From NCBI GenBank assembly GCA_000320545.1, contig ADNK01000487.1, forward strand, positions 13,736 through 77,735: a stretch of 64,000 bases of DNA, read 5' to 3'. The position numbers were made by a program, and so were the translations under genes. Below are positions 3,754 through 45,309 of the stretch, one piece after another (the first letter of the stretch is position 1; the number at the start of each line of letters is the position of its first letter). Source of the stretch: Bigelowiella natans CCMP2755 (Eukaryota > Protista > Cercozoa). The notes under the pieces were generated by a model. That model worked only from the letters and a program-made list of their open reading frames with translations, made no database searches and was not told the origin of the DNA.

Positions 3754-3794
<41 letters not shown>

Positions 3795-4307
3795 TGTGCG
3801 CATACATACGAACACAACAAACGCTGATATGATGTACGCATCGTCAACACCGCTATATAGCATCTTCCCGCTGTGCTAACGCTACTTTTTCCTTTTAGTT
3901 AAGTCAATCCGAGGCGAAACAGACTCAGGTCAACCCCGCGAGTGCCCTCAGAGAAGCGCAGGTGAGAGTGAGAGTGGGAGATAGAGAGAGTGAAAGAGAA
4001 AAACAGCCTGTGCAGTATTAATCATCGAATATTCTGCTAGTGCTGATGATGCTACTAATATCGCCTGATAGGAAGCTACACGCTTGCCTGGAGCATCTAC
4101 TGCCGTCGTTCTTCAGCTCAACGGTGAGAAAAGATTGAAGAGATGTACATCTGGAGAAAATAGGCTGTTTCAGCACTCTCTTCGGCGATGTAGTGTGCAT
4201 GAGCTTTCTTAATTCATAAACTTTCTTGGTTCTTTTGTTCTTCTTTCTTCTAAGTTTGGCTCGTGACGATTTTGTTAATGTCGCCCAGTTGTCATCACCG
4301 TCATCTT

Positions 4308-4348
<41 letters not shown>

Positions 4349-4794
4349 TCTCTTTCCCAACAATGTGCTACAGGAACGTCTCGAGAGGCAACCTACGCCA
4401 ACGTGGGAGATTCTGGCATCAGAGTCCTCCGAGATGGAAAGTAGTAGTAGTAGTAATAGTAGTACTTGATAATAAATCCTCTTCCTCCATTGCAAATGAG
4501 TTATTATGATTCTCTTTTTCTTGCGGTGTGTGTGGTGGGCGTTGTGTACCCTTCTCCTCTTCCTGATCATTCTCCTCCTCCTCCTCCTCTTACATTGCTT
4601 TTTGCGTCTCTTCTCCAGGATAGTTTACGCCTCACGGCCACTGATGCATGGTGCGTGTGTAGAATACCCCCTCCGCTTTTTCGTGTTAAAGCAGCAGCAG
4701 CAGCAGCAGCAGCAAATATGTAGTTGTTGTGTATAGCAATGATTGTCATTCGTGAGCGTAAGTAGACTGTGGTGTCGTACTGGTTCTCTCCTTC

Positions 4795-4825
<31 letters not shown>

Positions 4826-5112
4826 CTTCTTCGCCCTCTTCCTCAGGCTTCAACTGTCCATACCAGCTCGCATACACGCGGTTATCCCCCAATGCACAGG
4901 TAAAGAAAAATATCACAAGAGAGAATATTTCTGATGATACTTAATGACCTCATCTCGAGAATCGCCTGACGATAACATGGGGGTGTAGCTTGTTTGATTG
5001 TTTGTCTGTCGTATTAATCTTCCGTCGTGCGGTTTATGAGTTTTTGTGGAAACGTTCGTGTGTAGTATCTCCTCTGAATAGTGTGCTGGTTGTCACCATC
5101 ATCATCGTCATT

Positions 5113-5147
<35 letters not shown>

Positions 5148-5464
5148 TTGAAATCCAGACGATAAAGGACGCCGATATCGAGACAATACCGGTCATTTTC
5201 CGACAATTTATTATGATGATGATAAAATTGATATTGCTGTTGTTGATGCTGATGATGATGATGATGAAAATGATGCGGGCGGATGAAAGTAAAAATCATT
5301 AGAATGTATAAATATATAGATGTGTAGATATATATCTGTGTATGTAAATTATTCCTAAAATGTTACGTTCCTGTTTCTCTTGTCTTTCCCTCTCCTTTCT
5401 TCGCTCGCAGGTGCTGCCTGGTGATATCATTGTGGCTGCCACTGACGGAGTGTTTGACAATCTG

Positions 5465-25200: not shown

Positions 25201-25839
25201 GAGAACGAACAGCTAATGAAAGAAAAACGGGAGATGATAAACAGCGTGCGAACAATGGAGGAACAAACTCAGAGAGGAAATGATGAAGAGATCAAGAAAA
25301 AGACTGCTCGATTACAGGAACTTGAAATACTTACGGCAGAGCTTCGGTCGAAATTACACCAAGCTGATGGTAATTTAGCAGAAGCTCAGAAACAAAGAGA
25401 AGCAGCAATAAACGAGATGAAAAATATGGGGAATAAACTTCAAACTGGAGTTGTAAAAGGCTCTGAAGCTAGTGCTCCACCTCTGAAATCCTCAAATTCT
25501 GATAGAGAAGTCTTAAAGTGGAAAACTCGATGTCAAAAGCAGTCTGCAAAAGTGAAGGCAGCTGTAGCAAAAGAACGTGGATACAAGAAAGACATTGAAG
25601 GCTTGACAAGCACGTCTGAACTTCAAAGACAAGCGCTTGCAGACAAGGATACTAACATTGCAGAAAAAGAGAAGGAAATTCTTGAACTGAATCGACAGTG
25701 CACAATCCTACGTAATGTCATCAAGAAAAATAACATGGTGAGTTCTATTCGTCGCAAGCAGCCGAGCGGCAAGGAGAACGTACAAATTCGCAAATCAACC
25801 CGCTTAAGGAAAAAAAACGAAATTAAGTCAAGAACTTAG
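20932..25839 (+). CDS. Large coiled-coil protein (~1,400 aa)
   Basis: Five short 5' exons, then a 3.26-kb terminal exon (22576-25839). The sequence is continuously E/K/Q/L-rich heptads with no motor domain. It contains RRVTF and a C-terminal KEN followed by a basic tail. Confidence 0.85.
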
Positions 25840-26806: not shown

Positions 26807-29800
26807 TTACTCATTTTGCGTGAAACTTTCGCTCAGTAGCTTGTAAACATCGACAATGTATTGCATTTGAATGCCCTTCGGAAAGTGCTTGAACCACTCC
26901 ATTTCGTTCATGTAATTGTCACCTACAGGCGCCCAACCGATGAAATCTGCAATTGGAGCTGAGGCAGAAGTTTGCGGCTCGATGAGCCTTTGGATGATGA
27001 GTTCCTGCATTGTAGGAACAAGAGTTTCGAGGTCCAAGCCCTTCGCATCTTGCTGTAACCTCTTCCCTTCATCTGCACCGAGGACCTCCTTGTAGCGAGC
27101 ATGCACGTTCTCAAATGGGTCTTTCACGGTGAAATCGCGGAGCGTCTTCCAGAGGGAGTCGATGTGCTTCAGCTTGATTTTGGATTGGATCGTGTGAGAG
27201 CCGAAATCCACATCCTTCATGAGGAGAACGTCTTTAACGTACTCAATCAGGAACTTATCCCCCACACCAATCTTTTGGATGTAGGAGCCTCCAGTGGCTT
27301 GGAGGAAGCTAATGCAGGTTTCCAGGAGGCGCATGGCTTTGTGCGCCATAGCTGGAGAACCAAGCTCGTTGAGAATTTGTTTTTGCTCTTCACGAGTGAG
27401 TGGTTCTTGGTCTACCTTCTCCTTCAGAAGGAGAGTATTAACCGCTCCTTCATCGTCGGTATATTGCACCATTCGCAACTCCATCTCTACAAGGGGCTTT
27501 CCTACGAAGAAAACGTCAAGCAGATACTGTTCAGCATTGTTGAAGTTGTAGATCGTGGCTCCATCATCTCCTATGCTGACGCATTGCTTCGCGACGAAAG
27601 GAACAAATTTCCCTTCCAAGTCGTACTTCAAAGTGTGGGCGACTGAGAAGAATTTAGACGAAACGACGTTCTTGCGCGAGGAGTTGCGTTGGAGCTCCTG
27701 GCCTCTGAGCAGGAGCTTTTCGTAGATTATTTCCACAAATTGGTTGTGGCGACGGGACAGGTAGTTCATGATACCAAGGCCACAGATTCCCTCATCCTTT
27801 TCCTGGGGAAGCACCATAGTGATTGGAGTCTTCTCATCAATCGAAAATTTCTTGTACATGTCGGGAATCTCGAGACAGGTGAATCGCTCCACGAATTTCC
27901 ACCCTAGGTTCCAGGCCTGCACATACCCCTGGAAAGCATCACGCCATCTCTTCTTATCAGAAGCCTTGGAGATGGCTTGGCCGATCGTCAGTTTCTGAGC
28001 CGCTTCCTTCGTCAAGGCACGGTTGAACTTCTGAAGAAGCAGTGTCTGGAACTCGATTGCGGCGGGGAAGTACTGCAAGGCTTGCAGGTTTTTCTCGGAG
28101 GACAAGAAGGCCGAGAGGACAGGGAAGTTGGCCTTGTTATCCTCGCTGAGGTTGAGTTCCATCGTGAAATCCTCGAGGGAGAACGGCGAGCGATACCGCC
28201 ACAGCGCTGGAGAGTGCTCCTGTCTCATCGAAGCAGGCATGATCTTGATGTCAGATTTTTCCATCAGCTCTTGCGTGAACACTTGTGCTCCGTCCTCCGA
28301 GTCCTGGGCGAACAGCTTCTGCGATGCCTCGAGACGTGGGGCCATGTTCTTGCTATCGAATACAACATCCACATTATTCTTCCCGAAGTGTGTCTCGAAG
28401 GCGTTTCTCTTGGGGATTGTGTCGAGCACCACCCAGCTGTGAATGCCTTGGACCGGGGGTTTCTTCGCTTCTACCAACATGGGCGGAATGGTATTGGTCG
28501 CGACTTGCTTGTTCGGCAGCACGAGATCGTTGAGTAGGGAGTGGAGCAGGATGCCAACATCATCCGGCGACTTTCTCACGAGCTTCGTCAACACCTTCCA
28601 GTCACCTCGGATGTGGTCTGCGAGGAAACCAGCGGTGTTCTTATGTGCTTTTGCACTAATGGTCTTGTTGAACAGCTTGGTAACCCGCTTCACCCATGTT
28701 TTTCCCGACACAATGGAGCCAGCGAGCAATGCACAGTGCATAAGAAGGCGCTGCGATCGGTCACTGATGGGCGTCATCGAGCGGACAGTCTCGAACGGCG
28801 CGCTTTCCTCCTTCGCCTCCTTGAGGCAGTAGTTTGGCTCGGATTTGTCCAGCGCCTTGGTCTTCTGAGAGTAGTTGGTGTTTCCTTCGAGCCCAGAATC
28901 AAGGTCGACCTGCCCTGGAAGGAGATTGTGATTCAGGCCGCCGATCTTAACACCGCACGTGGCGCATTTTTGCACGACGGTGGGGCGACCGCACTTGTCT
29001 ACGAAATACGCATGGCCGTTGGAGCACTTGTACCATCTTCCTCCCAAGATCCGCACGGCCATTGCCTGAGCATCTTCAAGCATGCAGGGCAGCCACTTGT
29101 TCACGCACGTCTCTGGCTTGAAGATGAGTCCATAGAAGAAGCGAGGGAGGCTGTTCTCAGCGGAAGACAGCGCAGCAACAGCAACATGCACGAGCACGCG
29201 GAACAGTACGATATCCTCGGTTTTGCTCTCTGGAGTCAGCTGTAGTAAGAAGCCATTGGCAGCTTCTTCCCATGCGAAGAACGCGATAAACTCGCGCTCC
29301 TGCGCTGAGAGGAAGGCCAGGTTAGGCGAGCTCTTGACCCAGGCTGCCAACTTCTTAATTTGGTTTCTGGTTGCTGCAGGAACGTCCTCAAGGACCTTGA
29401 GCAGGTAGCACTCGTGGAAGATCGCAGCAAGGAGCGCACCTTTGAGCGCGGGGATGCTTTCCTTCTTCTGGGTGAAGGTCTGCGTGCAGATCGCCTCGAG
29501 CTCCTTGAAGCCGGAGGTCTTAGGGTCGAGCCCAGTGCTCAGGGCCACGTGCACGTCGGAGAAGAGGGACTGCGCCTTAAACGGGTTGGTGTTAGGGAGC
29601 TTGTTGGAACCGAGGAAACGGATCAGTCCAGGCTCCGACGTATTCTTCCAATCTTTGAGCCATTTGCATTCGCTCAATGGCGACACGAGCATCGCAGAGC
29701 GCAGGAAGGACACCCCGCGGGATCTCTCAAGATTCTTAAGCAAGAACATGCGAAGGGAACGCACCATCGTCGCCTTGCTTTGGAAGACCGGCTCAAGGGC

Positions 29801-32800
29801 TTTAGACAGCTTCAAGACATCAGGCTTTAGCGCCTGAGCTTTAGTCTTTTCTTCCTTCTTGTCCTCAGTTGCCTGGAGCACTTGGTCGATACCATTTGCA
29901 AAGATGACGATGACATGCCGCAGTTTCGCAATCGTAGTCAATACCTTCTCTACCGGGTGAGAGTTCTTGCCCTTAAACTGGAACTCAAGTTGATCGAGCG
30001 CACTCGTCAACTCTGGCATTACAGCGAGGGCGTCGCCCACGGTCAGGGTTTTTTCGGCGAAAATTTGCTCCTGCACCGAAGCGTAGTTGACGCACAAGTT
30101 GGTGCCTAGATATTTTGCCTTCTTCACGGTCATTGCCATCACTTTATGGATCATCTGTTTTGTAAAGGGAAGATCAGGTGTGCGAGATTTCGATATATGA
30201 CCACAACTTTCGAAGCAATAATTTCCTCAAAGGAACATGCACACACGCACACGCGCACACTCTCACGCACAGGCAGAATTTAAGGGAATAATATCATCGA
30301 GACTTCGAAAAAATTAGACAAAAGTTACCTCCGTCGCCTTCCCCTTTAGTTTGGGGTCCGGAAGCTCCAAGATCTTTCGGAGCAAAAAGCTCTTACCCGC
30401 GTCAGATGGGACGACATCCACTGCCGTCTTCCTCATCTCTTTCAGCTTTTTCCCAGCTAACATCGCCACGAAATCGACGATGAGCTTGCTTTCCTTGACG
30501 TCCTTCCCAGTTGCACCAAAGCAGAGCTCGAAGAGGTAGAACTCCATAAACCGTGACGCAGCAGCCCTAAGTCCCTCTTCCGTGGCCATCGCCTTGAGCT
30601 TGTTCTTGAGGTCCGTTGCAGGCCTGAGCTCTTTAGTTTTTAGAGGCAGGTTTGTGAGCAGGTTGAGGTCATGGCCTTCCAGCCACTCTTCAATTGCTGC
30701 ACGCTCGTATATGCGGCCATCATCTACTAGGATCACAGGGTCCTTGAACGGCTCCAGCGTGATCGGGCAGATGAAATCATCTTTAGGGTTGATGATTTGG
30801 AAGCGAAGGTCGGAGAACATCTTAACAATGGCGCGGAATATAGAGGATGTGCGCAACTCGCCCTTCGCAGTTGGTTCCAATGTGCGTAAAGTGAGAGCCG
30901 GCTCCACCTTCATTGGGACAGAAACATCCCGTATGAACGTGTACGTGAAAAGGAGCTTCTCCCAAGAATTTGAGACTTCCTCAAGCGCGCTTGGAGGCTC
31001 TGAAAGACGTCCGCAAATGGCTAGTAATCCCTCCACAATAGGTCGAACATCCTCGAATTTGGTCATCCAATCGCCATAGTCCTGGACTTCCTTCCACTCC
31101 TGAGCGCTTGGAGCGAGACCGGCGATGACGTGTCCCACGAGCGTCATGTCAAGATCTGCACCCATGCTCTCTGCGGCTAAAACAGAGCCCTTGATGGAAG
31201 CTAGGCATGGAGGCACGGCATCGATCAGCCCAAAGTACGCAGTGATGGTGGTTTCTGTCTGCCAGTAGTAAGCATGGATCTCTGAGATCAAGGTTGGTTC
31301 GGACCCCTTGGCGAGAGAGACGATCTTCCACAATATCTGCGCTTGCTGTACACGATCCATGTTCTGCGAGAAGGCACAGTTCATGGCGGTGAAATCGTAC
31401 GCGTAGCGGAAGAGCGTTGCCTTGTCCATCTTGTCGGCAATACCAAACTCCCAATTGAGGAGCGAGAACTGCGACTGGAGAGACTTGGCAGGATTTTGGC
31501 TATCCTGGGTGAGGGATCGAGCCTCAGTGAGGATACGGGCCAAGAAGAACGAGAAGGGGAAGCGAGAGCGGAATGACTGCGAGGATGATCCGTCACTGAG
31601 GACCTCGACTGCTCCGCCTTCCTTTATGCTCATAAGCTGAAAGCCACCGAGATCATTCACTGAGCGACCGAAGAGGTACAACCAGATATCTCTCACTTTG
31701 CTTCCCGCCTTTGAGAGGAGGAATAAACCGGTGTTTCTGTCCATGTGCGACAGCAGGAGTGCAAAGGCTGAGGATAATGTGTCCAGGATCTGCCTGTGGA
31801 GGGCTGCTTGGAAAGTTCCAGCAAGAGCGAGGTCCTCCTCTTTCTTGGCGGCCTGCATAAGCTCGAGCTTCTTTCCGCTACGTCCTACAATCTCCTTCAC
31901 AGCGTCGCTCACAGGATCGATAAATTGAGGATCGGTCTTGAGCGAGTTTAGCAGGAAGCCAATTTGCTCCTTGACGTCTTCGTTGGTGCGCTCGTGCAGA
32001 TAGACCAACCGAGCCAGGGCGCGTCGGAAAGACGCGAGGAGAACCTTTTTGAGGTCGAGGAGCTCCATGATGTCCTTCATGCTGAGGTCTTTGGTGTTGA
32101 GCATTTGCTGGATGTCTGGGAGACCGGTGTTCGCAGCGGGCTCTATGTCGTCAACGAAGGCCATTCGCCAGCGCTTATCGTAGTCAATGAGGAACTGAAG
32201 ATCACCACGCGGCAGGTGGACCAGGATCACCACATGCACTCCTTTGGGTCCAACTGGTCCTCCTGCAGATCCTGATTTTCCTTCCCCCTTGCCTTCGCTC
32301 TTTCCTTCCACGCTCTCTGCGGTCGCCTTGCCCTCCGTCGCTTTACCCTCGGCTGCTTTGCCTTCGGGCGCTTTGCCTTCTTCCCCTCCAGATTTAGATT
32401 CCTTCGCATCCTTCGAGTCGTCGTCGTCCTTTTCGACTTTCGGTTTTGCGTTCTTCACCTCACTCCAACGGGAGCGGAGAAATTTGGATCGCGCGTGCTC
32501 AATGATGTATCGAGCGTGCTCAATGCGACGGAAGCTTGCTGCCTGAGGATCGCACTGGAGTAGGAAAACTGAGCCCTGCTCGCAGGTCTCGAAGAAGTCA
32601 GAGATAGCCGTTTTAAGGTCTCTTTCGGAAGACAGCTCGTGCAAAGTTCTGGTGGTAACTTTCTTCCATTTACTATGCTGAGATAGAGCCTTTCCAGAGT
32701 GGAGAGACATAGGAGAGAAGGTCAGAATCTGAGCTTGGACACCCATATCATCGCGAGCCCATGGCTCGAACATGTTGTCGGCAAACGTGATGAAGTCAGA

Positions 32801-35800
32801 ATGATGCTGCTTCTTGAAGTATGTATCAACGACATCAATGCTGTGGAGCTGCTTGAGGGCAACGGAACGCTCGCGCAGAGTCATCACGCGGCACGCAGAC
32901 TCGGGGGTTGCGAGCCACAAGAGGCGCTGGATACATTCTTGTGTCGTTTCCTGAATGTCGGACACCTCAGGCAAGGACTGGACCAGGGAGGAAAGCATAT
33001 CGTTGTGGAACCCTACGAAGCAAGTACGAAGGTCTGACATGGAAGGTTTCTGATTGCCTTGGCCTGAGGAGAATATGGTTGTGAATTGGCGCAGGTTCTT
33101 CTCCACCTGTCGCTGAACGTTGGAGAGAAGGTTGGATCGCTCCATCACTTGCTTCTCGAAACGATTCAGCAGTGGAGGCGCCAGTCGGTTGTATGCGTCG
33201 ATCTTCTCGACGACGACGATCACGCGGAAGGAGCGGTGGATCTCACAAAGCCTAGAAGCAGTACCGAACGCAAGGCGAACGTATAGTTTCCCTCCGTATT
33301 CGGTGTAATGCTGGTTGAGTAGGTCGTATAGGGATTCGTAAAGATCCTCGCAGTATACGAGAACAACTGTGCGACCTTCGGCCATACACAGTTTGATGTT
33401 TTGCAGGTTGAGGCAGACCTGAAGGTCGGTCTTATCTGCAGGGAAGTCGGATCCAAAAATAACCTCCGTATTCTCCTGCTTACGTAAGTTGTAATCGAAT
33501 AAGAGCGAGAGAGCAGCGTTATTCTTCGTCAGCAGCATAAGATGACGCGCTTCCTTGGAGCCAATATTTTGACGAATCAACTCCACAACGTCGTCCTCCT
33601 TAGATCCTTTGCGTGAAATACCCATAGTCTCGTAGAACACATCAAGGACTTTCTGCATGTCATTGGGCTTTCCACCAAAGTTGCGCTGCACCGCATTCAT
33701 TACCACCTGTGCGTTGAGCTCGGCGCCCTTCTCTTCCGCAAGCATACGGTTGATGTGGCGAACAGTCGAGTAGAACTCACGAAGTCCCCAGAAGTCCTGT
33801 TGTTTCTGAGATTCGTATACGGTAGAGTACGCTCGCGCAATCTTACGCAGGAATCCGGACAGCTGAGCGTTATTGACCATACCCTCGGCTGTTTTAGACA
33901 GGTCGCTCACGGTTGGGGCCGGGCGGTAGAGATGCACAGCGCGATTCATTTTTGCGGGGTCGAGCGCCCAGTTGGAAATACCGACGAGCGTGTATTCGTG
34001 GTCCTCATCCAGGACCTTGTGGAGAACCTTAAGTGGCAGGTGAGGGCTCTGTTCAGCCAAACCAACCTCATCAAGCAGGACCACGCAAATGGTGTCAGGA
34101 GCACTGAGCTTGTAGCGAGCAGCAGCTTGGAAGGCTTGCTCGATACCGTCGGAAGTAGAGAGTGGAGAGCACTGGTATGAGAAGATGTCCACAGGGGGGA
34201 GAGATCGGAGGAAGGCATTCTCTGAAGCTTCTCCGTTCATGTTCGCCTGGATGAGACCCATGGCCAGCGACTTGGAAGTTCCAGGCTTGCCGACGACGAA
34301 AATAGGGATCTTATTCAGAATCGATACCATGATCATGAAAAGGTTTTCCAAGAGTGCCTCGTTCAGGGCGATTCCTTCAGGAATGTTGATGTGTTCGACA
34401 AAATCGCGCATCACTTGATCAATGACCTTCGAGAATCTATCGGCGTTGAGCTCAAGCCACTGGCAGCGCGGTCCATACTTGGGTTCTTTCTTCGTGGTGC
34501 CGCCGAACACGGAAGCATACAAAGAGCCCTTCTCAACAAAACCGATAGGTTCCTGAAGTTTATCCCAAGTCTTTTGAATAATGACCCCGAATTCTTTCCT
34601 GTCCTCGCGACCGAGACGTGCATGGTAGCAGTAGGCAAGGGACATGATCATAGCCCGACGCACATAATCCCTTGCAACCTCTTCCACGTTGAAGAACTCG
34701 AAGACACCCCACTTCTTATCATCCTTTTCTTCACTCGCGCCCACATGGCCGGCGAAATGCTCACCGAACCAACAGAATACCTTGACAGCGCGCGACACAT
34801 CCCGTAGCGATACAACGGAGCGCTCTTCGTTGTGGATCTTTCTCACGAACTCCTGTGCAGCAGAGATGAGCTTCGCGAACACGGCGACGAACTCCTGGAA
34901 GGGGCTCTCGCCTTTCTTGGACTCCATCTCCTCCATGAGCTTCTTCATCTCCTCAGGGGCCAGGGTGGTTCCTCCTGCCGGGGTAGATCCCGATCCAGAC
35001 CCTTGTTGTCGTTGCAGATTGCGCTGATGCTGAAGAATGCTGACGAGATCATGCGTAGCTTGGTTTCGCTGTCTAGAGTTGCCTCCTTGCATGGCAGCTG
35101 TCATCAGAGAGCGGATACGAGCCATCTCTTCCTCCTTTGTGGAGCCCTGCGATGCCCCACCTCCTTGAGGTTGAGCTGGTGTTGCCTTCTTGTCTCCCTT
35201 TTTCTCGTCCTTCGTCGTCTTCTTCTTCTCCTCGGTTCTCAGGTAGATCGAAAGCTGGCGCTTGAGGATAGCAGCCACATAAAGCGCCTCCGTCGCGGCC
35301 GGAAGGGCGCCGAAATCAAAGACATGGTCAATCATGGATTCGGGAAGAGGGTGTACCCGGTACACTAGATTCTTCAAAGGATCACGGATACCCGTACCGA
35401 TGTTTTCTGAGCCGCCTTGGAATGTGTCGAACGCGAGACCTGCCATGGCCTCTTGTTCCAGCGCTTGCTTCGACTTCAAACGGTATGGATTGCAAGCAGC
35501 GATGATCCTCATAGAGTTGGGCAGGAAGCGACCCTGGACAGAGCGGTCACAGATTATCTCCTTGAAGAGACCCATGCAGTTACAGGTGTTCACTTCATCG
35601 AGGAAGATCACCACTCGCTCCTCGTCGTGCAACATCTCCGCTTCCTCAATACGAAGCTTGAGCCAGCTTACTACATCATCTGCTTCCATTCCACCGTGTA
35701 TATTTAATGTTCTCAACGGCGTCCGCAGCACAGCTGTGAGTTGCTTAATCAGTGAGGATTTGCCGCAACCGGTCTCCCCCATAATCATAACTGGCAGCTC

Positions 35801-38800
35801 ATTTCTCAATCTAAGCTGAATTGACAACATCTTAAGCAGGTTGTCAATAGTAATGACGTATCCAGCGTTAACAGGATCGAGTTTCATGTCAGAGGCCCCG
35901 GTTGAAAGCCTCCAGCCCTCCACCTTTTTTAGGATATCCATGGCCTCTTCAGAGGTCAGCCTGGACCAGTCTTTGTCAAGATGGCGAAGGCCCTGCGCTT
36001 TGAGATTCTCCACAAGGATGGGTGAGATGTATTGGTTGAGGAACCGGCGATTGAGCGAGAGAATGTTGAATCCCTCGTATCCGCCGCCTCTTCTGAAACT
36101 TTCGTACCAGATGCACACGGGGTGATCCGTATCGTCCCACTTCATCATGTTTTGGAATCGAACAGCAAGGTTGTCAGAGGCCTGGCGAACAAGCTCAGGG
36201 TCTGCCCCGCCCTCCCGTGCTTGCGCCTGATCAAAAGCATGGTGGGTTAATTACATACACGACGATTATCAAGAAAGAAGAAGAGTTTTTTCTGGGTGGT
36301 TCAACATTGTTTGTTATAGCCTAGTTGATTCAGAGAAAAATGAACACGAGCGTGACCTCTTGCAATCCGATCGAAGATTGGCGACCAAGTGCAGGCTGTA
36401 CAGGAGGGGGTGCACCAGCGCCAAGTGCCACTTGAGCTTGAAGTGATCCACCACCAAATAAGTTGTTAGCGTTGCCTCCCTGAGAGTAAGGGTTGCTGCC
36501 AAAGGGGTTGGACCTGTTGCTTCCCCCAGCAGAGCCTGTCGCAACGTTTGGAACTTTATTCTTCTTCTCGACACGGCCGAATTGACGGCCACGAGGCACA
36601 GCACGAAGTGTGAAATCCTTGGAGGTCTCAATCATCAGATTGCAGAAGACATGCTTGATACGTTTCAGTTCCTCGAGGAATTGAAGCACCTCATTTGTGA
36701 AAATGAAGTATCCAGTGGTAGGGTCCATTCCTTGGAAGCCCGCATACATGAACTTGATGAAGTTATCGAAGATTAAGTAGCTAGGCTCGTCTCCTGGGGT
36801 TTGCTTGTTCATGGTAAACATTCGCAAGAGCTCAAACGCTTCAGCGGGGGAGAGAGGGTCCATCGGGCCCGGGTTCCACGCGAGATCTAACTTAGCCCCC
36901 GGAAGGAACTTTTGCTCCTTGTAAGCCTTCAAGAAGTGAGTTACGTAGCAAATAGGATCGAGGGAAGTGGGTGCTGGCAGTCCGATTTGGGTGTTTTGGG
37001 GAGGATTCTTAAATATTGGCATTGTGAGAGACATGGTTTCTGGGCCGACTTTGAGGTGCTGCTTTGGAAGCAGGGCGGGGAACCTCAGAGCTTCCGCCGT
37101 CTTGTTTCTCTCAGAGTTAGGAATCTCGAGATAGTAACAGTCCTTATTGCTCCGTGGATACACCGCACAAGTTACTGGATTCTTCAGCACTCCCACGATC
37201 AAAAGCTCGAATAAGCACGTGTTCGCATTGGCAGGAATAATGTGACCGATGTCAATATGGAAGGCGTTACGCTCGCGAGAACCGCCAAACTTAGAGAGAC
37301 GGGCAACTAGAGTTCCCGAGGTAGAGCTTTCATGGTAAGGCACACGTCGGTATGCAAACCGTTCATTAGCGGCCTGGCGTTTACCAATCTGGGTGAGAAT
37401 GTAGTGGGATTTGCCGCCTCCATTGATATTGGAAGATACGCATGTAGTCTCTCCACACCATTTTTTGCACGCGTTCGCAAGGGAATGCTTCAGAGTTTTT
37501 TGATCAAGAGGACCAAGCTCCACAAGCTGAGCAGAGAGAGAGTTCAGCAAGACCTGACGAGGTTTACCAGAGACGAGTAACAGTTGAGCGGCATCGTCAG
37601 TTCCGAAATCCGCCAGCATTTCCCTCAACTTCTCGAGGACAGAGACTTGGTATGTGTATGGCAGAGCGTGGATATCCGCAACCGTGAAGACGTAATGGCC
37701 TCGCTGGTGTTTCTTGGCAGAGATGAAACGGTAGAAAATGAGCTCAATCTCCTCTAAGGTAGTCTGGGACGAGCAGAAAAGGATTTCTGAGGGCTCAGGA
37801 ATACGCCCACGGCGTACATAAACAGACAGAACCACCTCGATGACAGCTTCAGCACTTTCTGCACAAGTAACGAACACCGGCAGACGCTTCTCAGCCATGA
37901 TAGATTCCTCTTCCTCAACGGATACAAGCATATCCGCACGATTCTTCGCTTGAGCGCCTGGAAGCGGAATGGCTCGGAAGTTGGCCTGGTTTCTTCCTTC
38001 ATCCTTTTCTTTCTCGGCAGCTTCTTTCGCCTTTCCTTCAGCACCGGCTCCCTTGCCCTCCTTAGACACCTTTGTAGAGAGAAGGCCATCCAGCATCGAG
38101 CCCAACGACTCGAGCTTAAACACGTTAGCCTTGGAAGAGATCAAGCCCGTATCGTTGTCTTCCTCCTCCATCTGCTTTACCCCTTCCTTAAGCTTCTTCG
38201 AGAACTCGCTGAATACCTTCTGGACCTCCCGTATGTCTACGGAAGACTTTACGAGCGTGAGCATCGACCCAAAGTCCTTGCCCGAATCGTACTGGGTTGC
38301 GTTCTCGCGGTAGGATGGAGAGCGTGATCGCCTTCTCTTCTTAATTCCGCCAGCGTCAATGATCATCTTCGCAAATGCTTCTGGACGAGGGGTCATACAC
38401 ATTAAGCATTTCTCGGTGTCTATCTTGTTGTCGAATGTACACGATGGGCATTTCCAGATCTTCGGAAGGGCATCCTCCTAACATTATCATTATCAGCACA
38501 ATCAATAAAAAAGCTAACAGAGGAAAAATCGGAGCTGGGACTGATTGGTATCACACTTTCATGTCCCCCACAAATTTTGCATACGTTACCTTTGATTCCT
38601 TCTTTTCCTCTTCCTTATTCTGTTCTTCATTCTCCTCCTCATTTCCCTTTGCTTCTTGCGATGGCCTCCATTTTTTGCTCTCTCCCAATAGCAGGTCGAC
38701 CAACTTCAGAATCTCACGCATTGTGAAGAAATTGAGATAGTAGAAGTTCGTACGTGCACGCTTGATAATAGCGTTCCACGAGGAGAGCTCCTGCTGCAAA

Positions 38801-41800
38801 TGGGAAAATTCCTTTTTCAAAGCAGCTGCATTTTCGTCCATAGTGAAAGGAATTCGAATGTGATATCCAGTCTGGAAAGCAAAGTGCCCTTTCTGGAACA
38901 AGGAGAAGATAAGATCCTTAATGTCCAAAGAAATCTGCAACTGGTCGAGGAATTTAGCAACAAGTTTGCTCATCTTGTGCTCCCTCTCCATTTTCGCAGG
39001 AATTTCCGTCATCACAATCTTTGATCTCAAGTCCAATAAAAACTCGAGATTCTCTGTATGAGAGGCCTGCGCCTGCTTGGCCTTCTTCTGTTGTTCGGTT
39101 TCTTCCGCTACTTTTTTGTCCTTTCCTTCTGCAACCATCTTCTTCTCCCAGTGAGTTTCAAGCACAAGGACATCATTAGAATCAGAGGAACTCTTGAATG
39201 AAAGAACACCATTGTTAAGGAAGTGAATAATGTCCTTACAAGCCTTTATACCAGCAGATTCTTTTCCGCCTTTAATGATACGGTAAAGAGCCGCAAAAGA
39301 CTGGGTCACAGACTCAAGGTGGCCTATCAACTCTCCTCCTTGCATATCAACTTCGGTACGGAAGCAGTGGATGAAATCTTTGAGGCTCTTGTAGGGCGGA
39401 GCCTGGTATAGGAGCCTCAATAATGCGGTTCGCAGAGACACTAAAGATGCAACTGCATTGACGATGTTGGCTTCCCCACCGGAATCGTTCACGAACTGCT
39501 TCATCTGATTGAACTGGGCCTGATTCTTCTGTTTAAGAATCCACTCAACCATCTGCTCAGAGTTTTTGTCAGCCAGCAAGGTGAGGAACTTCAACTGAAT
39601 CGATGTAAGCTGCGCTCCGAGGTTCTTTTTAACTGGAGCAACCAGTTCCGTGAGTGAGAGTAGAGTTTTCTTGCTCCACTCTGCTTTCAGTTGTTCATCA
39701 AGGTCCTTGAGCTGCTCATACAGCTGATCTCCTTTCTCAGTTCCCTCAAATAGAGACGCAAGCATCGTCGTCCTCAGCTTTAAGATGGCAGGGATGGAGT
39801 TCTTCATATGAAGCAGCATCGAAAAGTCCTTCAGTTTAATGATAGCATCTTGCGTCCATCCAGCCTGGCCACCAACAAAACCGTCGCCAGTGGATGTCAG
39901 CAGGATTAACTCTCGTACGTATTCTTCGTCGGAAGCCAGGGTTGCGAAGGTTTGTTCCAACCTTGGAACAGTAATGGAGCCATCTCCGACAGAATCCTTG
40001 AGTTTTCGCCATTCTTTCTTCACACGGGGAAGCAGTTCAGCAAATACTTCCGCTCTGTTCAGTTTTCGTGTATTTTTTTCGTCATCGAGGTTGGCAAATT
40101 TTCCCTTTTGGTCTGCAATTCCGGACTTTTCACGAATAAGAGCACGCCCAGACATACGCCATTGATCGAGGAAAAGGCGCGAGTATTGGAGTTCAGACAG
40201 CCACTCCATGTAAGTCACCTCCCTCAGTTTCTTATTGGTAAAGAAATTTTTAAATTTCCTCTTGATATCGACAAGCATGAGGTTGTTGTAGCCTTCTGTC
40301 CAGCTCTTGATAGTTTTTTGCATTTCTGTGACTTCAATAGGGACACCACAGTCACAATAGAAGTTGAGAAAGGTATTTGTTTGACGCAGTAAGGTATCGA
40401 AGTTCTCCACCTCACTAAGCTGAATCTTCAGCATATCTTGGGAGAACTTGCATTTGATCCGGCCGAGAAGGCCAAGTAACTGATCCTGATTATTCTTAAC
40501 TATATTCATAGTTTTCATTGTGGCATGGCCCCATTTCTGGCAAGCCGTCCTGAACGCCTTTTGATCGCTGTCTTCCACATTACAGGTACTTGTGAAATCC
40601 TTCCATTGGCCATCGTTCGTGGAAAGATGCATGACAAATTCTGCATCGTCGTAACCCTGGTCAATCATTGTGTCGACATACTTCGTGGAGATCCCTGCCG
40701 TGTTCAGCATCTCGACAATTTCCATTTGTTTTTGTTTATTTTCCAGGCTTTTCTTCAATTTAGTTTTCTGTTCCTTGTTCATATTTTTGCCCTTCTTCTC
40801 CAACTCAGCTTTGAACCAGGCCCTTGCTTTCTCATAGGTGGGAATTGTAAGAGCTATGGCTGTTTGTGAGAGAGATTCGTGAACGTGTTTGAGTAAGCCA
40901 TTTAATGGGGTGTTTTGCTTCCATTCCGTAGGACTAGCCCCGCGAGTTTCGAATAGCAAGCTCCAAATAACTTCAAAGTTCAAAATTGAACTAAGTCCTG
41001 GCTGCGCGCCCCCTGCAGTCGCTGCAAGAGTGTACAAAAGCGTGTGGCTGAGATTCGACTCTTTGCGCAAGACCTTAATGGAGTCGAGCAGCTTCTTCAG
41101 CTCGTTCTGGTCTTTTGCGACAACTGGTACTACCTCAGCGAGAATTTTGACAGCTCGCTCTGTCAAAAAGGTAGCCAAAGGCTCCTTGTAGTTCATAAAC
41201 CCTTCGTACTTATGTCCGAGGTTTGCAATTGTTTTGAGCACGACAGAACTTTCCCCCTTTAAGCAACGACAACGACCCAATTCAAATAGTAGCGATTGGG
41301 GGCGCTCGAGGAAATACTGGTTCTCCATAAGGCGGTTAATAACATCACAGGCCTCCTCCAATGCGGCTGTAAGTTTCATCTCTTGCTCTGGAGGAGAAAG
41401 TTTCTTTGTCTCCCATTTCGTCACGTAGCCCTCTTTCACCTGAACGCGCTCCTCAAGATTTGGACGCATTGCGAAACCATTCTTAAACCAAGTGTAAGCA
41501 GCCTGGTCCAACCGAACGAATTTAGCCAAAAGTTCAGAGTTCGCTTTTGCTTTCGAGTCCTCTTTCTTGTCGCTACCTTCGGGTGGCTCATCGAAGTTGA
41601 TAGTGTGAGATTTGCAGCACAGTCGAGTGAAGCTCAAAATCGAACCTATGAACTTGGCTTCATCTGTAACACAGGACTTGGACTTGAAGAGGGCGGCTGC
41701 AACTTCAGGTGATTGAAGCATGGGGTACTTCTCCACAAGCTTCTGTAGAGGCCCAAGCTCTTCTTCAACCCATTGAGCAGAGGCAACCCAATCAGCAACA

Positions 41801-44143
41801 GCGGGGAGTGCTTCCTTTAGGTGGATGATAAATTCCTCAGTGAAAAGGAGCGCTAGACTTGCCGTGCATGGAGCGTAAAGAACTAGATGCTTGAGATATT
41901 CCGTCCCCATTCGTTGCATTATTTCTCCATCACTTTCTTTCTTCTCCGCCGCTTCTGCCTCGGAGACTGCCATGACAGCGGCTATTGCCTCGTCACCAGA
42001 CATTGCCGAGTAGTCTACGGCTGCCGCATTATTTTTCGATTCGGGTTTGTCCTCTTTCGCTGCGGCTTCAATCATAACTTGCGCGGATTTGATTGTGGAG
42101 AGAGCGAGCTGCATGAGATCCTTCCACTGCTTATCAAACGACTTTGTGAGTGCTGCACGTTTTTTCATTGCTTTCTTCGAGCCTAAGAGGAGAATGGTAA
42201 ATTACTTTTGAAACTCTAAAAACTCTAAAACACTTTTTGCTAAGATACAAAATGCTGTCAACCTTTCTCCAATTCGATTCGATCTTCCTCTACGTTATCC
42301 TCTTTGTCTCCATCATCGAATTGAACAAAGAAAGTGCCGTTGCTGTTCACACGTCCGATGTAGCCATTATAATAGGTTCCCCTTCCCTTATAGTTGCATC
42401 TTATCCTTTCTCCTTGCTGCAAGGTCTTGTTCAGACCAGCGTTAGGAGGTTGTGGGACAGGGGGAAGCATTTTCTTATCCTTGAGGAATGGTGCCACTCT
42501 GATCCACTGGTATGCCTCGTCATCCATAACACGTTCAGCAGCCTCCCGAAGACCAGCTGTACAGTAATGATAGTGGGGCCCCAATGCTTCCTTTAGATCT
42601 GTCTTCATAAGAGCGTGGACGTCAATGTTCTTAAGAACAAACCAGCACCATGCCGAGGGCTTAAGTTGCAGCTTCTTTTTTGTACCTCCTACGCCCTCTG
42701 TCATCTCAAATTTAGAGATTCCATGAGCTCCAACAACAGCAAGAAGAGCAAATATGATCATAGGATCTAAGTTCTCCTTCTTGGACTCTGCCATCATTTT
42801 CAGTCCCTTTTCCATTGCTTCTTCGCCCTGGTCTCTCGTTGCTTTCTTATTGTAGCAAGAATTCAGATAATAAACTCTGGTGACAAATCCCCGGGGGTTT
42901 ATCTGATAAATGCGAATGGAAGTTACTATGAATCAGCTTAACAAAACGATAACTTTATACCTTTCCATCAAGTAATAGTTGGAATGCAGCTTCAGTTGTA
43001 GATACAATCTGTAATGAAATAAAACACAGTTTCTTATGAATCACTGACGATTTTTTCAATTTATGAATGACTATTCTCGCTGGCTACGAGCTATTCGTAC
43101 CGTATCTGCAATTGTGGGCTGATTGTATCCCTTGAAGAAGCCTTTAGATCCCTTGTTATTCTTCCGTAATATCGCAAAATAATGGGAGTTGCAGGATTTT
43201 TTCCTGGATGAAATCATGTGAGAGAAAATTCATATACATCCTTTTTGTAGTCTGACCTCCTGTTCATTCCTCCTTCCAGATGAACTTTACCTTCAGCGTC
43301 CTGAATTCCGATTTTATACTCGAAAATACCTAATGAAGAACGATTCGAAATTAAATTTGCACTTCTCGCTGTCGAAATATAAATAGCATTCACCAGTGTT
43401 ACAGAATTCCTTTCTCTCGAAAGGCAATTCGATCGATGCCGAAAACATACGCGGGTCTGCCTCCTAAAAAGGAAAAATCACTTAATGTTAAACGAGTGTT
43501 TGGACACAGATTTTATGGAAGATAAACCTACCGATCTTGTCATTTGGACGCCCTTGCCTTCCCATTCTCCCATGATAGGTAGATTTCCCACAACAACTGG
43601 GACTGCTCCCTCAGGTAACCACTTAGCATCAAGCATTACGTGGAAATTACATGCACTTCGGGCCTCAGGATCTATAAGAAGAAATGTGATTTCAGCACAT
43701 GTAGTATCATGAAAACGTTACGAAGCTCACTTTTTGGTATGTATCCCTTGAATTTCGGTTGGTACTTGTCACATTCTTCCGCATAATGGAAACCTCGCAT
43801 TCCGATAATGCTGAATGTACGTTCGCGAAATCTGGTCCATCTGTAAAGGAGATTTTTAAATATATGAAAAGATATCGTTGAAGCAAACAATTCTATGCAA
43901 AGAGAAATTATAGCGAGAAATTTATCCGAACCTTTTATCACCATCCGTGTAGACAATGTGGTGTGTTCCTTTCTCATCATCCCAATTGTCAATATCTCCT
44001 TGGTACCATTTGTCCATTTTTGGCCAATGCACAGAGAGTGTTTTGCCAAGGAGAAACTCAGGGTCGGACTCGTCATATTGCCACTCTGCCTCCCCCGGCA
44101 TGTAATTGGGGTCTTTTGTGACCTCTGACGGAACCTCGGCCAT
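26807..44143 (-). CDS. RNF213/mysterin-like giant AAA+ ATPase / E3 ubiquitin ligase (~5,400 aa): Tudor, CBM20-like, Tudor, NZF, AAA core, U-box, RZ finger, CTD
   Basis: Phase-compatible exons 42902-42263, 42182-38590, 38477-36357, 36226-30329 and 30154-26807, plus about seven small 5' exons from the ATG at 44143. RNF213-type motifs: GGGKSHY, MGETGCGKS...FLDEVNT, IAACNPYR, LVYRVHPLPESM, VGKPGTSKSLA, SYQCSPLST, LLDEVGLAE, GISNWALDPAKMNR, LYDLLNQ, PLLNRFEK and RZ finger CSNGH...CGRP...CATC...IGGLNH. Confidence 0.93.
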
Positions 44144-45309
44144 TTTTTTGATCTACAAAGACCTGTATAAAATAAGCACGTGAGTTTGACGGCGAATATG
44201 AGTGGAATGCTCGAGCAATCGTACTGCCACTTTAAAGTTGGCACTTGAAAACATGCCATTCGAAAGAATGATCTCCCAAAATGTATCTCGATATGACTTT
44301 CGTACAAACAAATTCGAACAATTTGAGAAAGAAATAGAGGATTGAGAGAGTTGAATCGAGAGAATAGAGGGATGGAAGAGGGAGGGTACGAACAACCTCC
44401 GTGTAAAAAAGATCTTGTGGACTTGTTCGGGAGGGGCCAGCGATTCAGCTTTACGAAATGCCTTTTCTCGTGACCAGATCCCAGAATGTATTATGTTCCA
44501 CCTTAGCGGATTGTACTTTTAGAAGTCGTAAGGATATTTTAAGCTTTTGCGCATCGACAGAGAGAAAACTAGTTGGAAAATGCACGCAATCGAAATATCA
44601 GGATATTTTCTGGAGTGGTTTAAAGGAATGCAGCTGCAAATTCGCCAAACAATGATGAAATGGAAGTCGTTTAATACGAAATGCACAACAATTTACTCCT
44701 TTGAATGCTTGACTTTGCACTCAATTAAGAGTAAACTGCACCGAACTGGTAAGACAGAGCCCTGCAATTATTCATCCTTTGTAAAGTGTTTAATTGCAAG
44801 AAAATATATGAGGTTTCTCACATGAGACACAATTTTAAAGCAGTTAGCAATCACATTGTAGGATATAAGCAATATAACAGGCAATGAAAAAACTAAATAA
44901 ATAGCAAATCATTGCTGACAATTTCAAACTCAATACCAGAAAAATCTTCTTTTTGCAGGTGATTTTGTCCTGCATCCTGGATTGTAAGACAAAAAAGTTA
45001 ACTCGTTAGCTTTCCACTCTTTTCGACGGAAAAAGCTGAGATTCGTCTTTGGTTTCCGTTCGGTTTTTTTTTGTAGTTAACATCAAGATCCAGTAGATCA
45101 ACAGCTCGCGCGAGAATTTATTCCTAGTCTAGCTCCTAAGTACAACTGATTTTTTTTTCCCAGCTGGACTAATTCTATGTAATTCGAGAATGAAAATTTA
45201 CGTGTGCGATTTAATTTTCCCAAGAGGAAATCATACTTTTTCCTTGCTGTCTCGGTTAATTTTTTTCTACGTCGTAAAAATCCTCGTCATACATCTGATG
45301 TCAGTACCC

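What the first reader, a model, noticed from the sequence alone, without database searches (positions are those of the whole stretch)
26807..44143. Protist RNF213/mysterin-like giant E3 ligase with a remodelled architecture (Tudor-CBM20-Tudor-NZF-AAA-Ubox-RZ)
Seen in sequence: five large ORFs plus small 5' exons join through GT-AG introns in compatible phase into one ~5,400-aa protein, about the size of animal RNF213. It has the RNF213 domain order: CBM20-like N-arm, stalk, AAA core with P-loops GGGKS, GETGCGKS and GKPGTSKS and acidic Walker B motifs, E3 module, RZ finger and CTD. Established: animal RNF213 is a cell-autonomous immunity ligase that ubiquitylates bacterial LPS and associates with lipid droplets. 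Inference: this alga-like protist has a full, apparently functional version with extra reader modules not present in the human protein. It is a candidate ubiquitin-based defence sensor against engulfed bacteria or viruses.
Basis: partly seen in the sequence, partly recalled or inferred. Interest (0 to 1): 0.92.

Follow-up and report, generated by a model that had tools for sequence, protein, structure and literature searches.

The report
Giant RNF213-like ubiquitin ligase in alga
The alga Bigelowiella natans makes one 5,451-residue relative of RNF213, the human ligase of infection defence and Moyamoya disease; its RING finger is swapped for a U-box and extra reader modules are added, which suggests this family is far older and more modular than the animal literature I could search says.

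Summary
On the minus strand, 12 coding exons (ATG 44143, stop 26807-26809) plus one 5'UTR exon give a single 5,451-aa reading frame. Spliced transcriptome contigs of 15-16.6 kb from three studies remove nine GT-AG introns exactly as modelled. The other two introns are supported by phase and by relatives.

The protein is a true RNF213 homologue. Against solved RNF213 structures, exon 11 scores E 2e-152 and exon 12 scores 2e-38. The Walker A and B motifs of AAA3 and AAA4 are intact. The RZ finger keeps all four zinc ligands and the catalytic Cys/His pair.

A canonical U-box sits where animals have the RING. A RanBP2/NZF finger with the ubiquitin-binding T-F...M signature precedes the AAA core. 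The N-terminus reads Tudor, CBM20, Tudor-like.

The organism is Bigelowiella natans: a JGI model is 100% identical but stops inside intron 9, so the public annotation splits the gene.

The design is not unique. Two paralogues in the same genome share it, and 17 of 29 aligned protist relatives carry the U-box. CBM20 is already known in human RNF213. I found no paper describing any of this. A defence role is inference only. Verdict: a new variant of a known kind, of moderate interest.

The parts
44399..44444 (-). 5'UTR exon (approximate), joined to exon 1 across a 234-nt intron (44165-44398)
   Evidence: The loose end of contigs X3 and X5 at 44164 maps to 44399 onward.
43932..44164 (-). Exon 1, with start codon at 44143. 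Encodes aa 1-71, including most of Tudor 1 (aa 27-79; 43934-44065 plus the start of exon 2).
   Evidence: Pfam PTM_DIR17_Tudor scores E 4.1e-5 on P0260:1-500, below the curated cut-off. phmmer to Tudor structure 7de9 gives E 4.4e-5. Atlas features score 0.87.
42961..43840 (-). Exons 2-7: 43840-43731, 43671-43531, 43462-43392, 43327-43256, 43202-43101, 43008-42961. The CBM20 domain (aa 133-203) spans 43597-43200 across exons 3-6.
   Evidence: Pfam CBM_20 scores E 8.6e-5 and 22.7 bits, against a cut-off of 23.3. BLASTP to the Pfam-significant CBM20 of homologue P0152 gives 3e-7. 29 of 30 named atlas hits are CBM_20, at 0.97.
42262..42902 (-). Exon 8 (aa 253-466): a helical region followed by a Tudor-like module at 42282-42413 (aa 416-459).
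   Evidence: Pfam hits are to several Tudor families at E 7e-4 to 0.1, all below cut-off. 28 of the 30 weak PDB hits listed are Tudor domains, best E 0.012.
38589..42181 (-). Exon 9 (aa 466-1664): the N-arm or stalk. It has no named domain.
   Evidence: It is 100% identical to JGI Bigna1 model P0260. It is collinear with the N-arms of long protist homologues. There is no PDB sequence hit.
36357..38476 (-). Exon 10 (aa 1664-2370): NZF/RanBP2 zinc finger at 38382-38456, a linker, then the first AAA units with P-loop GGGKS at 37407-37421.
   Evidence: Pfam Zn_ribbon_RanBP scores 5.3e-8, above cut-off. The best PDB matches to the finger are HOIL-1L NZFs. GGGKS aligns with mouse RNF213 GVGKS.
30329..36226 (-). 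Exon 11 (aa 2371-4336): AAA3 (Walker A 35756-35779, Walker B 35594-35614), AAA4 (Walker A 34268-34291, Walker B 34064-34084), remaining AAA units, hinge and E3-back, then the U-box at 30590-30781.
   Evidence: phmmer to RNF213 structures gives 2.2e-152. Pfam AAA_5 scores 1.6e-12 and U-box 1.8e-9. The AF2 model has pLDDT 85.8. Foldseek and VIA-align both match RNF213.
26807..30154 (-). Exon 12 (aa 4337-5451 plus stop): rest of the E3 module, RZ finger at 28913-29044, C-terminal domain, stop codon at 26807-26809.
   Evidence: Pfam ZnF_RZ-type scores 1.9e-18. phmmer to human RNF213 residues 4469-5189 gives 2e-38. Motif spacing was checked.

Best explanation
This is one expressed nuclear gene of the chlorarachniophyte alga Bigelowiella natans. 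It encodes a 5,451-aa member of the RNF213/mysterin lineage of AAA+ E3 ubiquitin ligases.

Shown:
- Domain order is Tudor, CBM20, Tudor-like, helical N-arm, NZF zinc finger, dynein-like AAA core, hinge and E3 module with a U-box in the RING slot, RZ finger, C-terminal domain.
- AAA3 and AAA4 have intact Walker A and B motifs.

Inferred mechanism, by homology with mammalian RNF213:
- ATP binding to AAA3/AAA4 switches on the E3 module.
- Ubiquitin passes from an E2 to the RZ-finger cysteine (C4724 in my numbering, paired with H4745; zinc ligands C4713, H4717, C4733, C4736) and then to a substrate, possibly a non-protein one.
- Unlike the mammalian RING, which lacks the Lys/Arg linchpin and is dispensable, the U-box looks like a working E2-recruiting domain. 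It has the CPI loop, the YER motif and a Lys at the usual linchpin position. The enzyme may therefore have two catalytic routes, as a 2025 preprint (10.1101/2025.10.14.682297) reports for ZNFX1.
- The NZF probably binds ubiquitin already on the target, which would help further copies assemble.
- CBM20 and the Tudor modules would supply target recognition.

The biological role, surveillance of bacteria, viruses or damaged organelles, is the least certain step. I put it at about 0.4.
For: - Single spliced transcript and one open frame.
- RNF213 homology: exon 11 E 2.2e-152, exon 12 2e-38, exon 10 5e-5.
- Walker motifs align with the mouse AAA3 and AAA4 motifs.
- RZ spacing is C-x3-H-x6-C-x8-C-x2-C-x8-H. 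It is identical to the ZNFX1 and RNF213 ligand and catalytic positions given in preprint 10.1101/2025.10.14.682297.
- U-box: Pfam 38 bits against a cut-off of 21.4; phmmer 1.3e-9 to the rice PUB12 U-box.
- Structure: AF2 model pLDDT 85.8 and pTM 0.80. The top nine Foldseek hits are all RNF213. VIA-align aligns model residues 71-487 with human RNF213 3701-4152 at Z 17.3, and the U-box residues 333-407 match U-box and RING domains at Z 9-10 and rmsd about 1.9 A.
- NZF: above the Pfam cut-off, with the T-F...M signature.
- Organism: P0260, named jgi/Bigna1/129044, is 100% identical. The polyubiquitin has a one-residue insert between monomers.
- Two paralogues keep the U-box, the NZF, the P-loops and the N-terminal modules.
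Against: - No biochemical or cell-biological data exist for any non-animal homologue that I could find.
- The two Tudor modules and CBM20 each fall below Pfam's curated cut-off.
- The AF2 model of the N-terminus failed (pLDDT 42).
- The NZF-ubiquitin complex test gave no verdict.
- That the U-box occupies the RING position rests on a collinear structural alignment range, not on a residue-by-residue superposition I could inspect.
- Introns 10 and 11 were not seen in reads.
- Raw RNA-seq coverage was sparse: 95 reads from about 6% of run X23.
Confidence: 0.75

Rival explanations
1. The enzyme is the same, but its job is housekeeping rather than defence. It would mark storage polysaccharide, lipid droplets or damaged organelles such as the plastid and nucleomorph compartment, with CBM20 reading the cell's own glucan and the Tudor modules reading methylated host proteins.
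For: CBM20 is a starch or glucan binder by family. Mutating the mammalian RNF213 CBM20 did not change pathogen targeting (PMC11549300). From my own knowledge, mammalian RNF213 also acts on lipid droplets. The Tudor 1 type, PTM/DIR17/PDS5C-like, is a reader of the cell's own chromatin in plants. The three paralogues are only about 68% identical in the AAA core, which is not obviously a fast arms-race signature.
Against: The one biochemical activity characterised in detail for the family is pathogen or LPS ubiquitylation (PMC11549300; preprint 10.1101/2025.10.14.682297). From my own knowledge, B. natans has a record of giant-virus and virophage encounters. Nothing in the sequence discriminates between the two roles.
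Confidence: 0.35
2. There are two or more adjacent genes, as in the public JGI annotation: an N-arm protein of 1,675 aa and a separate AAA-E3 protein.
For: JGI model aug1.8_g3752 (P0260) ends after exon 9.
Against: That model ends only because it reads 12 codons into intron 9 and reaches a stop. Spliced contigs from three studies join 38589 to 38476 in phase. The frame stays open across the join. Long homologues such as P0132 and P0135 carry N-arm, AAA core and E3 module in one chain.
Confidence: 0.03
3. It is a decaying or catalytically dead relic that keeps the fold but not the activity.
For: No activity data exist. The loop 2 sequence of the U-box (NLLTNLPL) departs from the usual CPxT motif.
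Against: A 16.4-kb frame has no stop. Transcripts appear in many runs. Every catalytic motif checked is intact. The motifs are also conserved in two paralogues.
Confidence: 0.03

Closest known systems
Mammalian RNF213 / mysterin (PDB 6TAX, 8S24, 9JWG)
   Same: Giant single chain with the same order of modules: N-terminal CBM20, helical N-arm, six-unit dynein-like AAA core with active AAA3 and AAA4, hinge, E3 module, RZ finger with catalytic Cys/His, and C-terminal domain. Sequence E-values reach 2e-152, and the E3 segment superimposes on the human E3 module (Z 17.3).
   Different: A U-box without zinc ligands replaces the C3HC4 RING. An NZF zinc finger is inserted between N-arm and AAA core. 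Tudor-type modules flank the CBM20. Identity is only about 31-34% in the AAA core and about 16% in the E3-back region.
ZNFX1 (the other human RZ-finger protein)
   Same: It has an RZ finger with identical ligand and catalytic spacing. It combines the RZ finger with a U-box/RING-like E2-binding domain, described as 'bi-catalytic' in preprint 10.1101/2025.10.14.682297.
   Different: ZNFX1 has an SF1 helicase core rather than a dynein-like AAA ring, and a Miz-type hybrid domain rather than a canonical U-box. There is no homology outside the RZ finger.
Unnamed protist RNF213-like proteins, for example Naegleria gruberi XP_002677863 (4,953 aa), Cercozoa sp. M6MM, Prorocentrum and Polarella proteins, and many EukProt and IMG sequences
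   Same: They belong to the same family and sit in the same protist half of the core tree. 17 of the 29 aligned sequences carry the same U-box. P0152 has an N-terminal CBM20. P0121 has an NZF with the same signature.
   Different: Most lack the NZF. Some have a Cys-rich RING-like domain in the slot, and others have nothing there. Tudor modules were seen only in the three Bigelowiella paralogues. None has been described in a paper I could find.
Plant PUB-type U-box E3 ligases (OsPUB12/CIE1, GmPUB13, AtPUB14)
   Same: The U-box domain itself is 36-44% identical to these, with rmsd of 1.3-2.3 A.
   Different: Only the 65-residue domain is shared. The surrounding protein is unrelated.

Membership tests
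RNF213 / mysterin family | Dynein-like core of six AAA units, with intact Walker A and B motifs in AAA3 and AAA4 | tested here: met
   phmmer gives 2.2e-152. GETGCGKS/IFLDE and GKPGTSKS/VLLDE align with the mouse motifs.
RNF213 / mysterin family | RNF213-specific E3 module fold (E3-back, shell and core) and C-terminal domain | tested here: met
   The AF2 model of exon 11 residues 1480-1966 matches only RNF213 structures at the top of the Foldseek list (E 2e-8, TM 0.52-0.61). VIA-align gives Z 17.3 to human residues 3701-4152. Exon 12 aligns to human 4469-5189 at 2e-38.
RNF213 / mysterin family | RZ finger with four zinc ligands and a catalytic Cys/His pair | tested here: met
   Pfam PF20173 scores 66 bits against a cut-off of 27. 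The spacing of all six residues equals that reported for ZNFX1 and RNF213.
RNF213 / mysterin family | C3HC4 RING finger in the E3 module, the feature that gives the family its name | tested here: not met
   There is no RING pattern. A U-box lacking the zinc-binding cysteines occupies the slot. I therefore file this as an RNF213-like variant, not an orthodox RNF213.
RNF213 / mysterin family | N-terminal CBM20 domain (human residues 378-515) | tested here: inconclusive
   Pfam CBM_20 scores 22.7 bits, just under the 23.3 cut-off. BLASTP to the CBM20 of homologue P0152 gives 3e-7. Atlas features score 0.97. There is no usable structure model.
RNF213 / mysterin family | ATP-gated, RING-independent ubiquitylation of LPS, lipid or protein substrates | not testable with these tools
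   This needs biochemistry.
U-box E3 domain (PF04564) | RING-like cross-brace fold without zinc ligands, with CPI...DPV...G.TYER motifs | tested here: met
   Pfam scores 38 bits against a cut-off of 21.4. phmmer to OsPUB12 gives 1.3e-9. The model aligns to U-box structures at Z about 10 and rmsd 1.9 A.
NZF / RanBP2-type zinc finger (PF00641) | W-x-C-x2-C-x3-N-x6-C-x2-C. For ubiquitin-binding NZFs, also T-F after the second Cys and a hydrophobic residue between the last two Cys. | tested here: met
   Pfam scores 32.4 bits against a cut-off of 27. The sequence is WKCPSCTFDNKIDTEKCLMC. Actual ubiquitin binding is not established, because complex prediction gave no verdict.
Tudor domains (PTM/DIR17-type and Tudor_5-like) | Significant match to a Tudor profile, or the five-stranded barrel fold | tested here: inconclusive
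   Tudor 1: Pfam 23.7 bits against 27.2, and PDB 7de9 at E 4.4e-5. Tudor 2: E 7e-4 to 4e-3, all below cut-off, with only Tudor structures among the weak PDB hits. The fold model failed.

The most novel reading that the evidence does not exclude
RNF213 is an ancient, pan-eukaryotic cell-autonomous surveillance ligase, present in Rhizaria, Alveolata, Discoba and animals. Its RING position is an exchangeable socket for E2 recruitment: RING, U-box, a Cys-rich hybrid, or nothing. In the Bigelowiella clade a fully competent U-box plus a ubiquitin-reading NZF would turn it into a two-site, ubiquitin-primed enzyme that builds self-amplifying coats on microbes or viruses. This would be an immune mechanism of a single-celled alga homologous to the human one.
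Probability: 0.2. Interest if true: 0.8.

Novelty: new variant of a known kind. Interest (0 to 1): 0.55.

Why it matters
The RNF213 papers I could reach deal with vertebrates and simian primates. The one statement on deeper history I met traces the RZ domain of ZNFX1 to choanoflagellates.

This gene and its relatives show the whole machine in Rhizaria, dinoflagellates and Naegleria: CBM20, N-arm, AAA ring, E3 module and RZ finger.

The RING slot varies in nature between RING, U-box and absence. That fits the experimental finding that the mammalian RING is dispensable, and it offers natural variants for dissecting E2 choice.

The NZF and Tudor additions suggest how target reading can be re-wired.

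It also corrects a split gene model in the B. natans reference annotation.

The limits are plain. This is comparative evidence only, the sequences are already public though unnamed, and no function has been tested.

Tried and rejected
- Pfam exon by exon on the small 5' exons gave only CBM_20 at E 0.13 and Tudor at 1e-3. The N-terminus became testable only when the spliced JGI protein P0260 turned up.
- The AF2 model of P0260:1-480 without an alignment reached pLDDT 42 and is unusable. No alignment could be built: the homologue search with residues 1-480 found nothing, and the search with exon 9 found only the protein itself.
- Complex prediction of the NZF with the organism's own ubiquitin and zinc gave no verdict (score 0.02). 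It is not evidence either way.
- Pfam found no RING or U-box at the equivalent region of ten other long homologues. The alignment later showed that the domain is deleted or replaced in some sequences.
- The look-up of encoding contigs had no record for P0260.
- Literature searches for non-animal RNF213, for a U-box variant, or for RNF213 together with Bigelowiella found nothing relevant. Otten 2021 is not held.
- The 272-codon open frame 44490-43675 is rejected as an exon: its translation looks non-coding and the splice joints cut through it.
- Contamination or recent transfer from animals is rejected. The gene has Bigelowiella-type tiny introns and two paralogues, and it falls in the protist half of the tree.
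- All searches used single exons or database proteins by reference.


Full report
**Gene model**

The feature lies on the minus strand. Stop-to-stop frames gave large open frames at 42932-42261, 42201-38554, 38477-36333, 36250-30317 and 30226-26810.

The look-up of sequencing runs listed 20 runs from eight studies that hold the stretch. Read laying on 38380-44370 placed assembled transcript contigs from three studies: X1 16,414 nt, X3 15,110 nt and X5 16,622 nt. Nine introns of 53-112 nt are cut out, all GT-AG on the gene strand. Contig positions imply about 11.4 kb of transcript downstream of 38380, which is enough to reach about 200 nt beyond the stop at 26807.

The contigs' 5' ends continue into an upstream 5'UTR exon at about 44399-44444.

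Combining these joints with two introns inferred from GT-AG sites and phase (36356-36227 and 30328-30155), a script found one open frame of 5,451 codons from ATG 44143 to the stop at 26807-26809. An in-frame stop lies just upstream of the ATG within exon 1.

- The exon 11/12 junction is confirmed by P0016, a 74%-identical protein from a 5.8-kb IMG contig that carries it as one unbroken open frame (sample 3300017235). That the sample is a transcriptome is my reading of its accession series, not a tool result. Its alignments to the two exon ends abut at residues 610 and 611.
- The exon 10/11 junction abuts within two residues in P0001.
- I could not view these two introns in reads.
- Raw RNA-seq (X23) gave sparse coverage, 95 reads, all in one orientation.

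**Organism**

Exon 9 is 100% identical over its full length to P0260, which its source names eukprot jgi/Bigna1/129044/aug1.8_g3752. The sequence of P0260 equals my spliced exons 1-9, then runs 12 codons into intron 9 to a stop.

The genome is therefore Bigelowiella natans, a chlorarachniophyte alga in the Rhizaria, and the public annotation splits this gene. Earlier notes of this scan had suggested the same organism.

As an independent sign, the genome's polyubiquitin carries one extra serine between monomers. From my own knowledge, that is a signature of Cercozoa and Foraminifera.

P0260 gave me a legitimate reference for the spliced N-terminus. The joined full-length protein was never sent to any tool.

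**Identity**

phmmer against PDB chains gave these matches to RNF213:
- exon 11: E 2.2e-152, in four collinear stretches
- exon 12: 2e-38, residues 327-1089 against human 4469-5189
- exon 10: 5e-5
- exon 9 (N-arm): nothing

In the alignments, GETGCGKS and IFLDE match the mouse AAA3 Walker A and B motifs, and GKPGTSKS and VLLDE match those of AAA4. An upstream GGGKS aligns with mouse GVGKS. By position this is probably the ATP-holding AAA2 site, but that assignment is my inference.

Pfam places four domains above their curated cut-offs: AAA_5, U-box (38 bits against 21.4), ZnF_RZ-type (66 bits against 27) and a RanBP2-type zinc finger (32.4 bits against 27).

The RZ finger reads C-x3-H-x6-C-x8-C-x2-C-x8-H. 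This is the same spacing as the four zinc ligands and the catalytic Cys/His pair reported for ZNFX1 and RNF213 in preprint 10.1101/2025.10.14.682297.

**The U-box and the RING slot**

I aligned exon 11 residues 1480-1966 with 28 homologous segments (alignment A1) and folded the exon 11 segment. The model has mean pLDDT 85.8 and pTM 0.80.

- The nine best Foldseek matches are all RNF213 structures (E 2e-8 to 2e-6, TM 0.52-0.61).
- VIA-align matched model residues 71-487 to human RNF213 3701-4152 (9jwg_A; Z 17.3, 391 residues aligned).
- Model residues 333-407 match U-box and RING domains at Z 9-10 and rmsd about 1.9 A.
- By collinearity this puts the U-box at about human residues 3960-4040, where the RING lies. 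The human RING coordinates are from my own knowledge, and I could not inspect a residue-level superposition.

The U-box aligns with rice PUB12 at E 1.3e-9. It keeps the CPI loop, DPV, G-x-x-YER and a lysine at the usual linchpin position. The mouse RING has a leucine at the linchpin position and is dispensable (PMC7311170).

**Other modules**

The NZF (WKCPSCTFDNKIDTEKCLMC) carries the T-F...hydrophobic signature of ubiquitin-binding NZFs. Its best PDB matches are HOIL-1L NZFs.

On P0260:1-500, Pfam gives:
- PTM_DIR17_Tudor: E 4.1e-5 at residues 44-70
- CBM_20: E 8.6e-5 at residues 133-203 (22.7 bits, cut-off 23.3)
- Tudor_5: E 4e-3 at residues 416-453

Supporting evidence for these three modules:
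- Residues 27-79 match the Tudor structure 7de9 at 4.4e-5.
- The CBM20 region matches the Pfam-significant N-terminal CBM20 of homologue P0152 at 3e-7.
- 29 of 30 named atlas neighbours of the CBM20 region are CBM_20 clusters, at score 0.97.
- Tudor 1 neighbours are PTM/DIR17 Tudor clusters at 0.86-0.87, which is a lead only.
- For Tudor 2, 28 of the 30 weak PDB hits listed are Tudor domains.

CBM20 is not new to the family. Human RNF213 has one at residues 378-515 (PMC11549300).

**How widespread is the design?**

The genome (91.4 Mb) holds two more loci, on contigs C1447 and C1107, with 68-69% identity in the AAA core. Both keep the U-box, an NZF, both P-loops and pieces matching the N-terminal modules. 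Only the window gene has the T-F pair in its NZF.

Public protein sets hold many relatives. Named ones include Naegleria gruberi XP_002677863, Cercozoa sp. M6MM, Prorocentrum cordatum and Polarella glacialis. None carries a functional name.

In alignment A1 the RING slot holds a U-box in 17 of 29 sequences, a Cys-rich RING-like domain in 4, and nothing in 8.

A FastTree of the AAA3-AAA4 core (90 rows) separates animals from protists and makes the two Bigelowiella copies sisters. That tree is quick and unrooted, so neither an age nor a direction of change follows from it.

An NZF with the same signature occurs in one further relative, P0121, and not in the other long homologues.

**Interpretation**

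The anatomy supports an ATP-gated, RZ-finger-dependent ubiquitin ligase of the RNF213 type. It has an apparently competent second E2-binding domain (the U-box), a probable ubiquitin reader (the NZF) and three candidate target readers.

The defence role is an analogy. A housekeeping role on glucan, lipid or organelles is nearly as likely.

I found no paper on non-animal RNF213 or on a U-box variant, but the library is incomplete.

**Verdict**

This is a new variant of a known kind. It is shared by a clade rather than unique to this gene, and it is of moderate interest.

Noticed in passing
window 38553-38588 (intron 9) and protein P0260: The public JGI model Bigna1 aug1.8_g3752 ends by reading 12 codons into intron 9 (…KESK then VTYAKFVGDMKV). 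The reference annotation therefore splits this gene into an N-arm protein and a remainder.
   Followed up: yes
L008:1489-1950 (G000:C3384): The polyubiquitin gene has one extra serine between monomers (…LRLRGG-S-MQIF…). From my own knowledge this is the insertion known as a Cercozoa/Foraminifera marker, and it fits the Bigelowiella assignment.
   Followed up: partly
G000 contigs C2538, C2552, C2734, C280: The Tudor-2-like module (P0260 residues about 410-470) also matches inside other very large open frames of this genome, of 3,608, 2,086, 3,183 and 1,914 codons. This suggests a Tudor-type module shuffled among giant proteins.
   Followed up: no
window 22510-25839 (+): A 1,109-codon A-rich open frame runs convergent to the RNF213-like gene. 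It has only sub-threshold coiled-coil Pfam matches (DUF1664, ATG16) and is probably a coiled-coil protein.
   Followed up: partly
alignment A1; proteins P0002, P0003, P0121, P0178: Four protist relatives have, in the RING/U-box slot, a Cys-rich RING-like domain that still keeps the U-box-like 'DPV' motif. Eight others have the domain deleted. This looks like a natural RING/U-box/none series.
   Followed up: partly
P0121, residues about 515-540: An IMG metagenome homologue of 4,123 aa has an NZF at the same position with the T-F...M signature (FSCSVCTFENSVNSTICAMC). The NZF insertion is therefore not confined to Bigelowiella.
   Followed up: partly
G000:C1447 about 64.7-84.8 kb and G000:C1107 about 17.5-41.3 kb (loci L001-L007): There are two paralogous RNF213-like genes with the same module set. 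In the C1447 copy the RZ finger is split over three exons. In the C1107 copy the RZ finger was not found at E 1e-3.
   Followed up: partly
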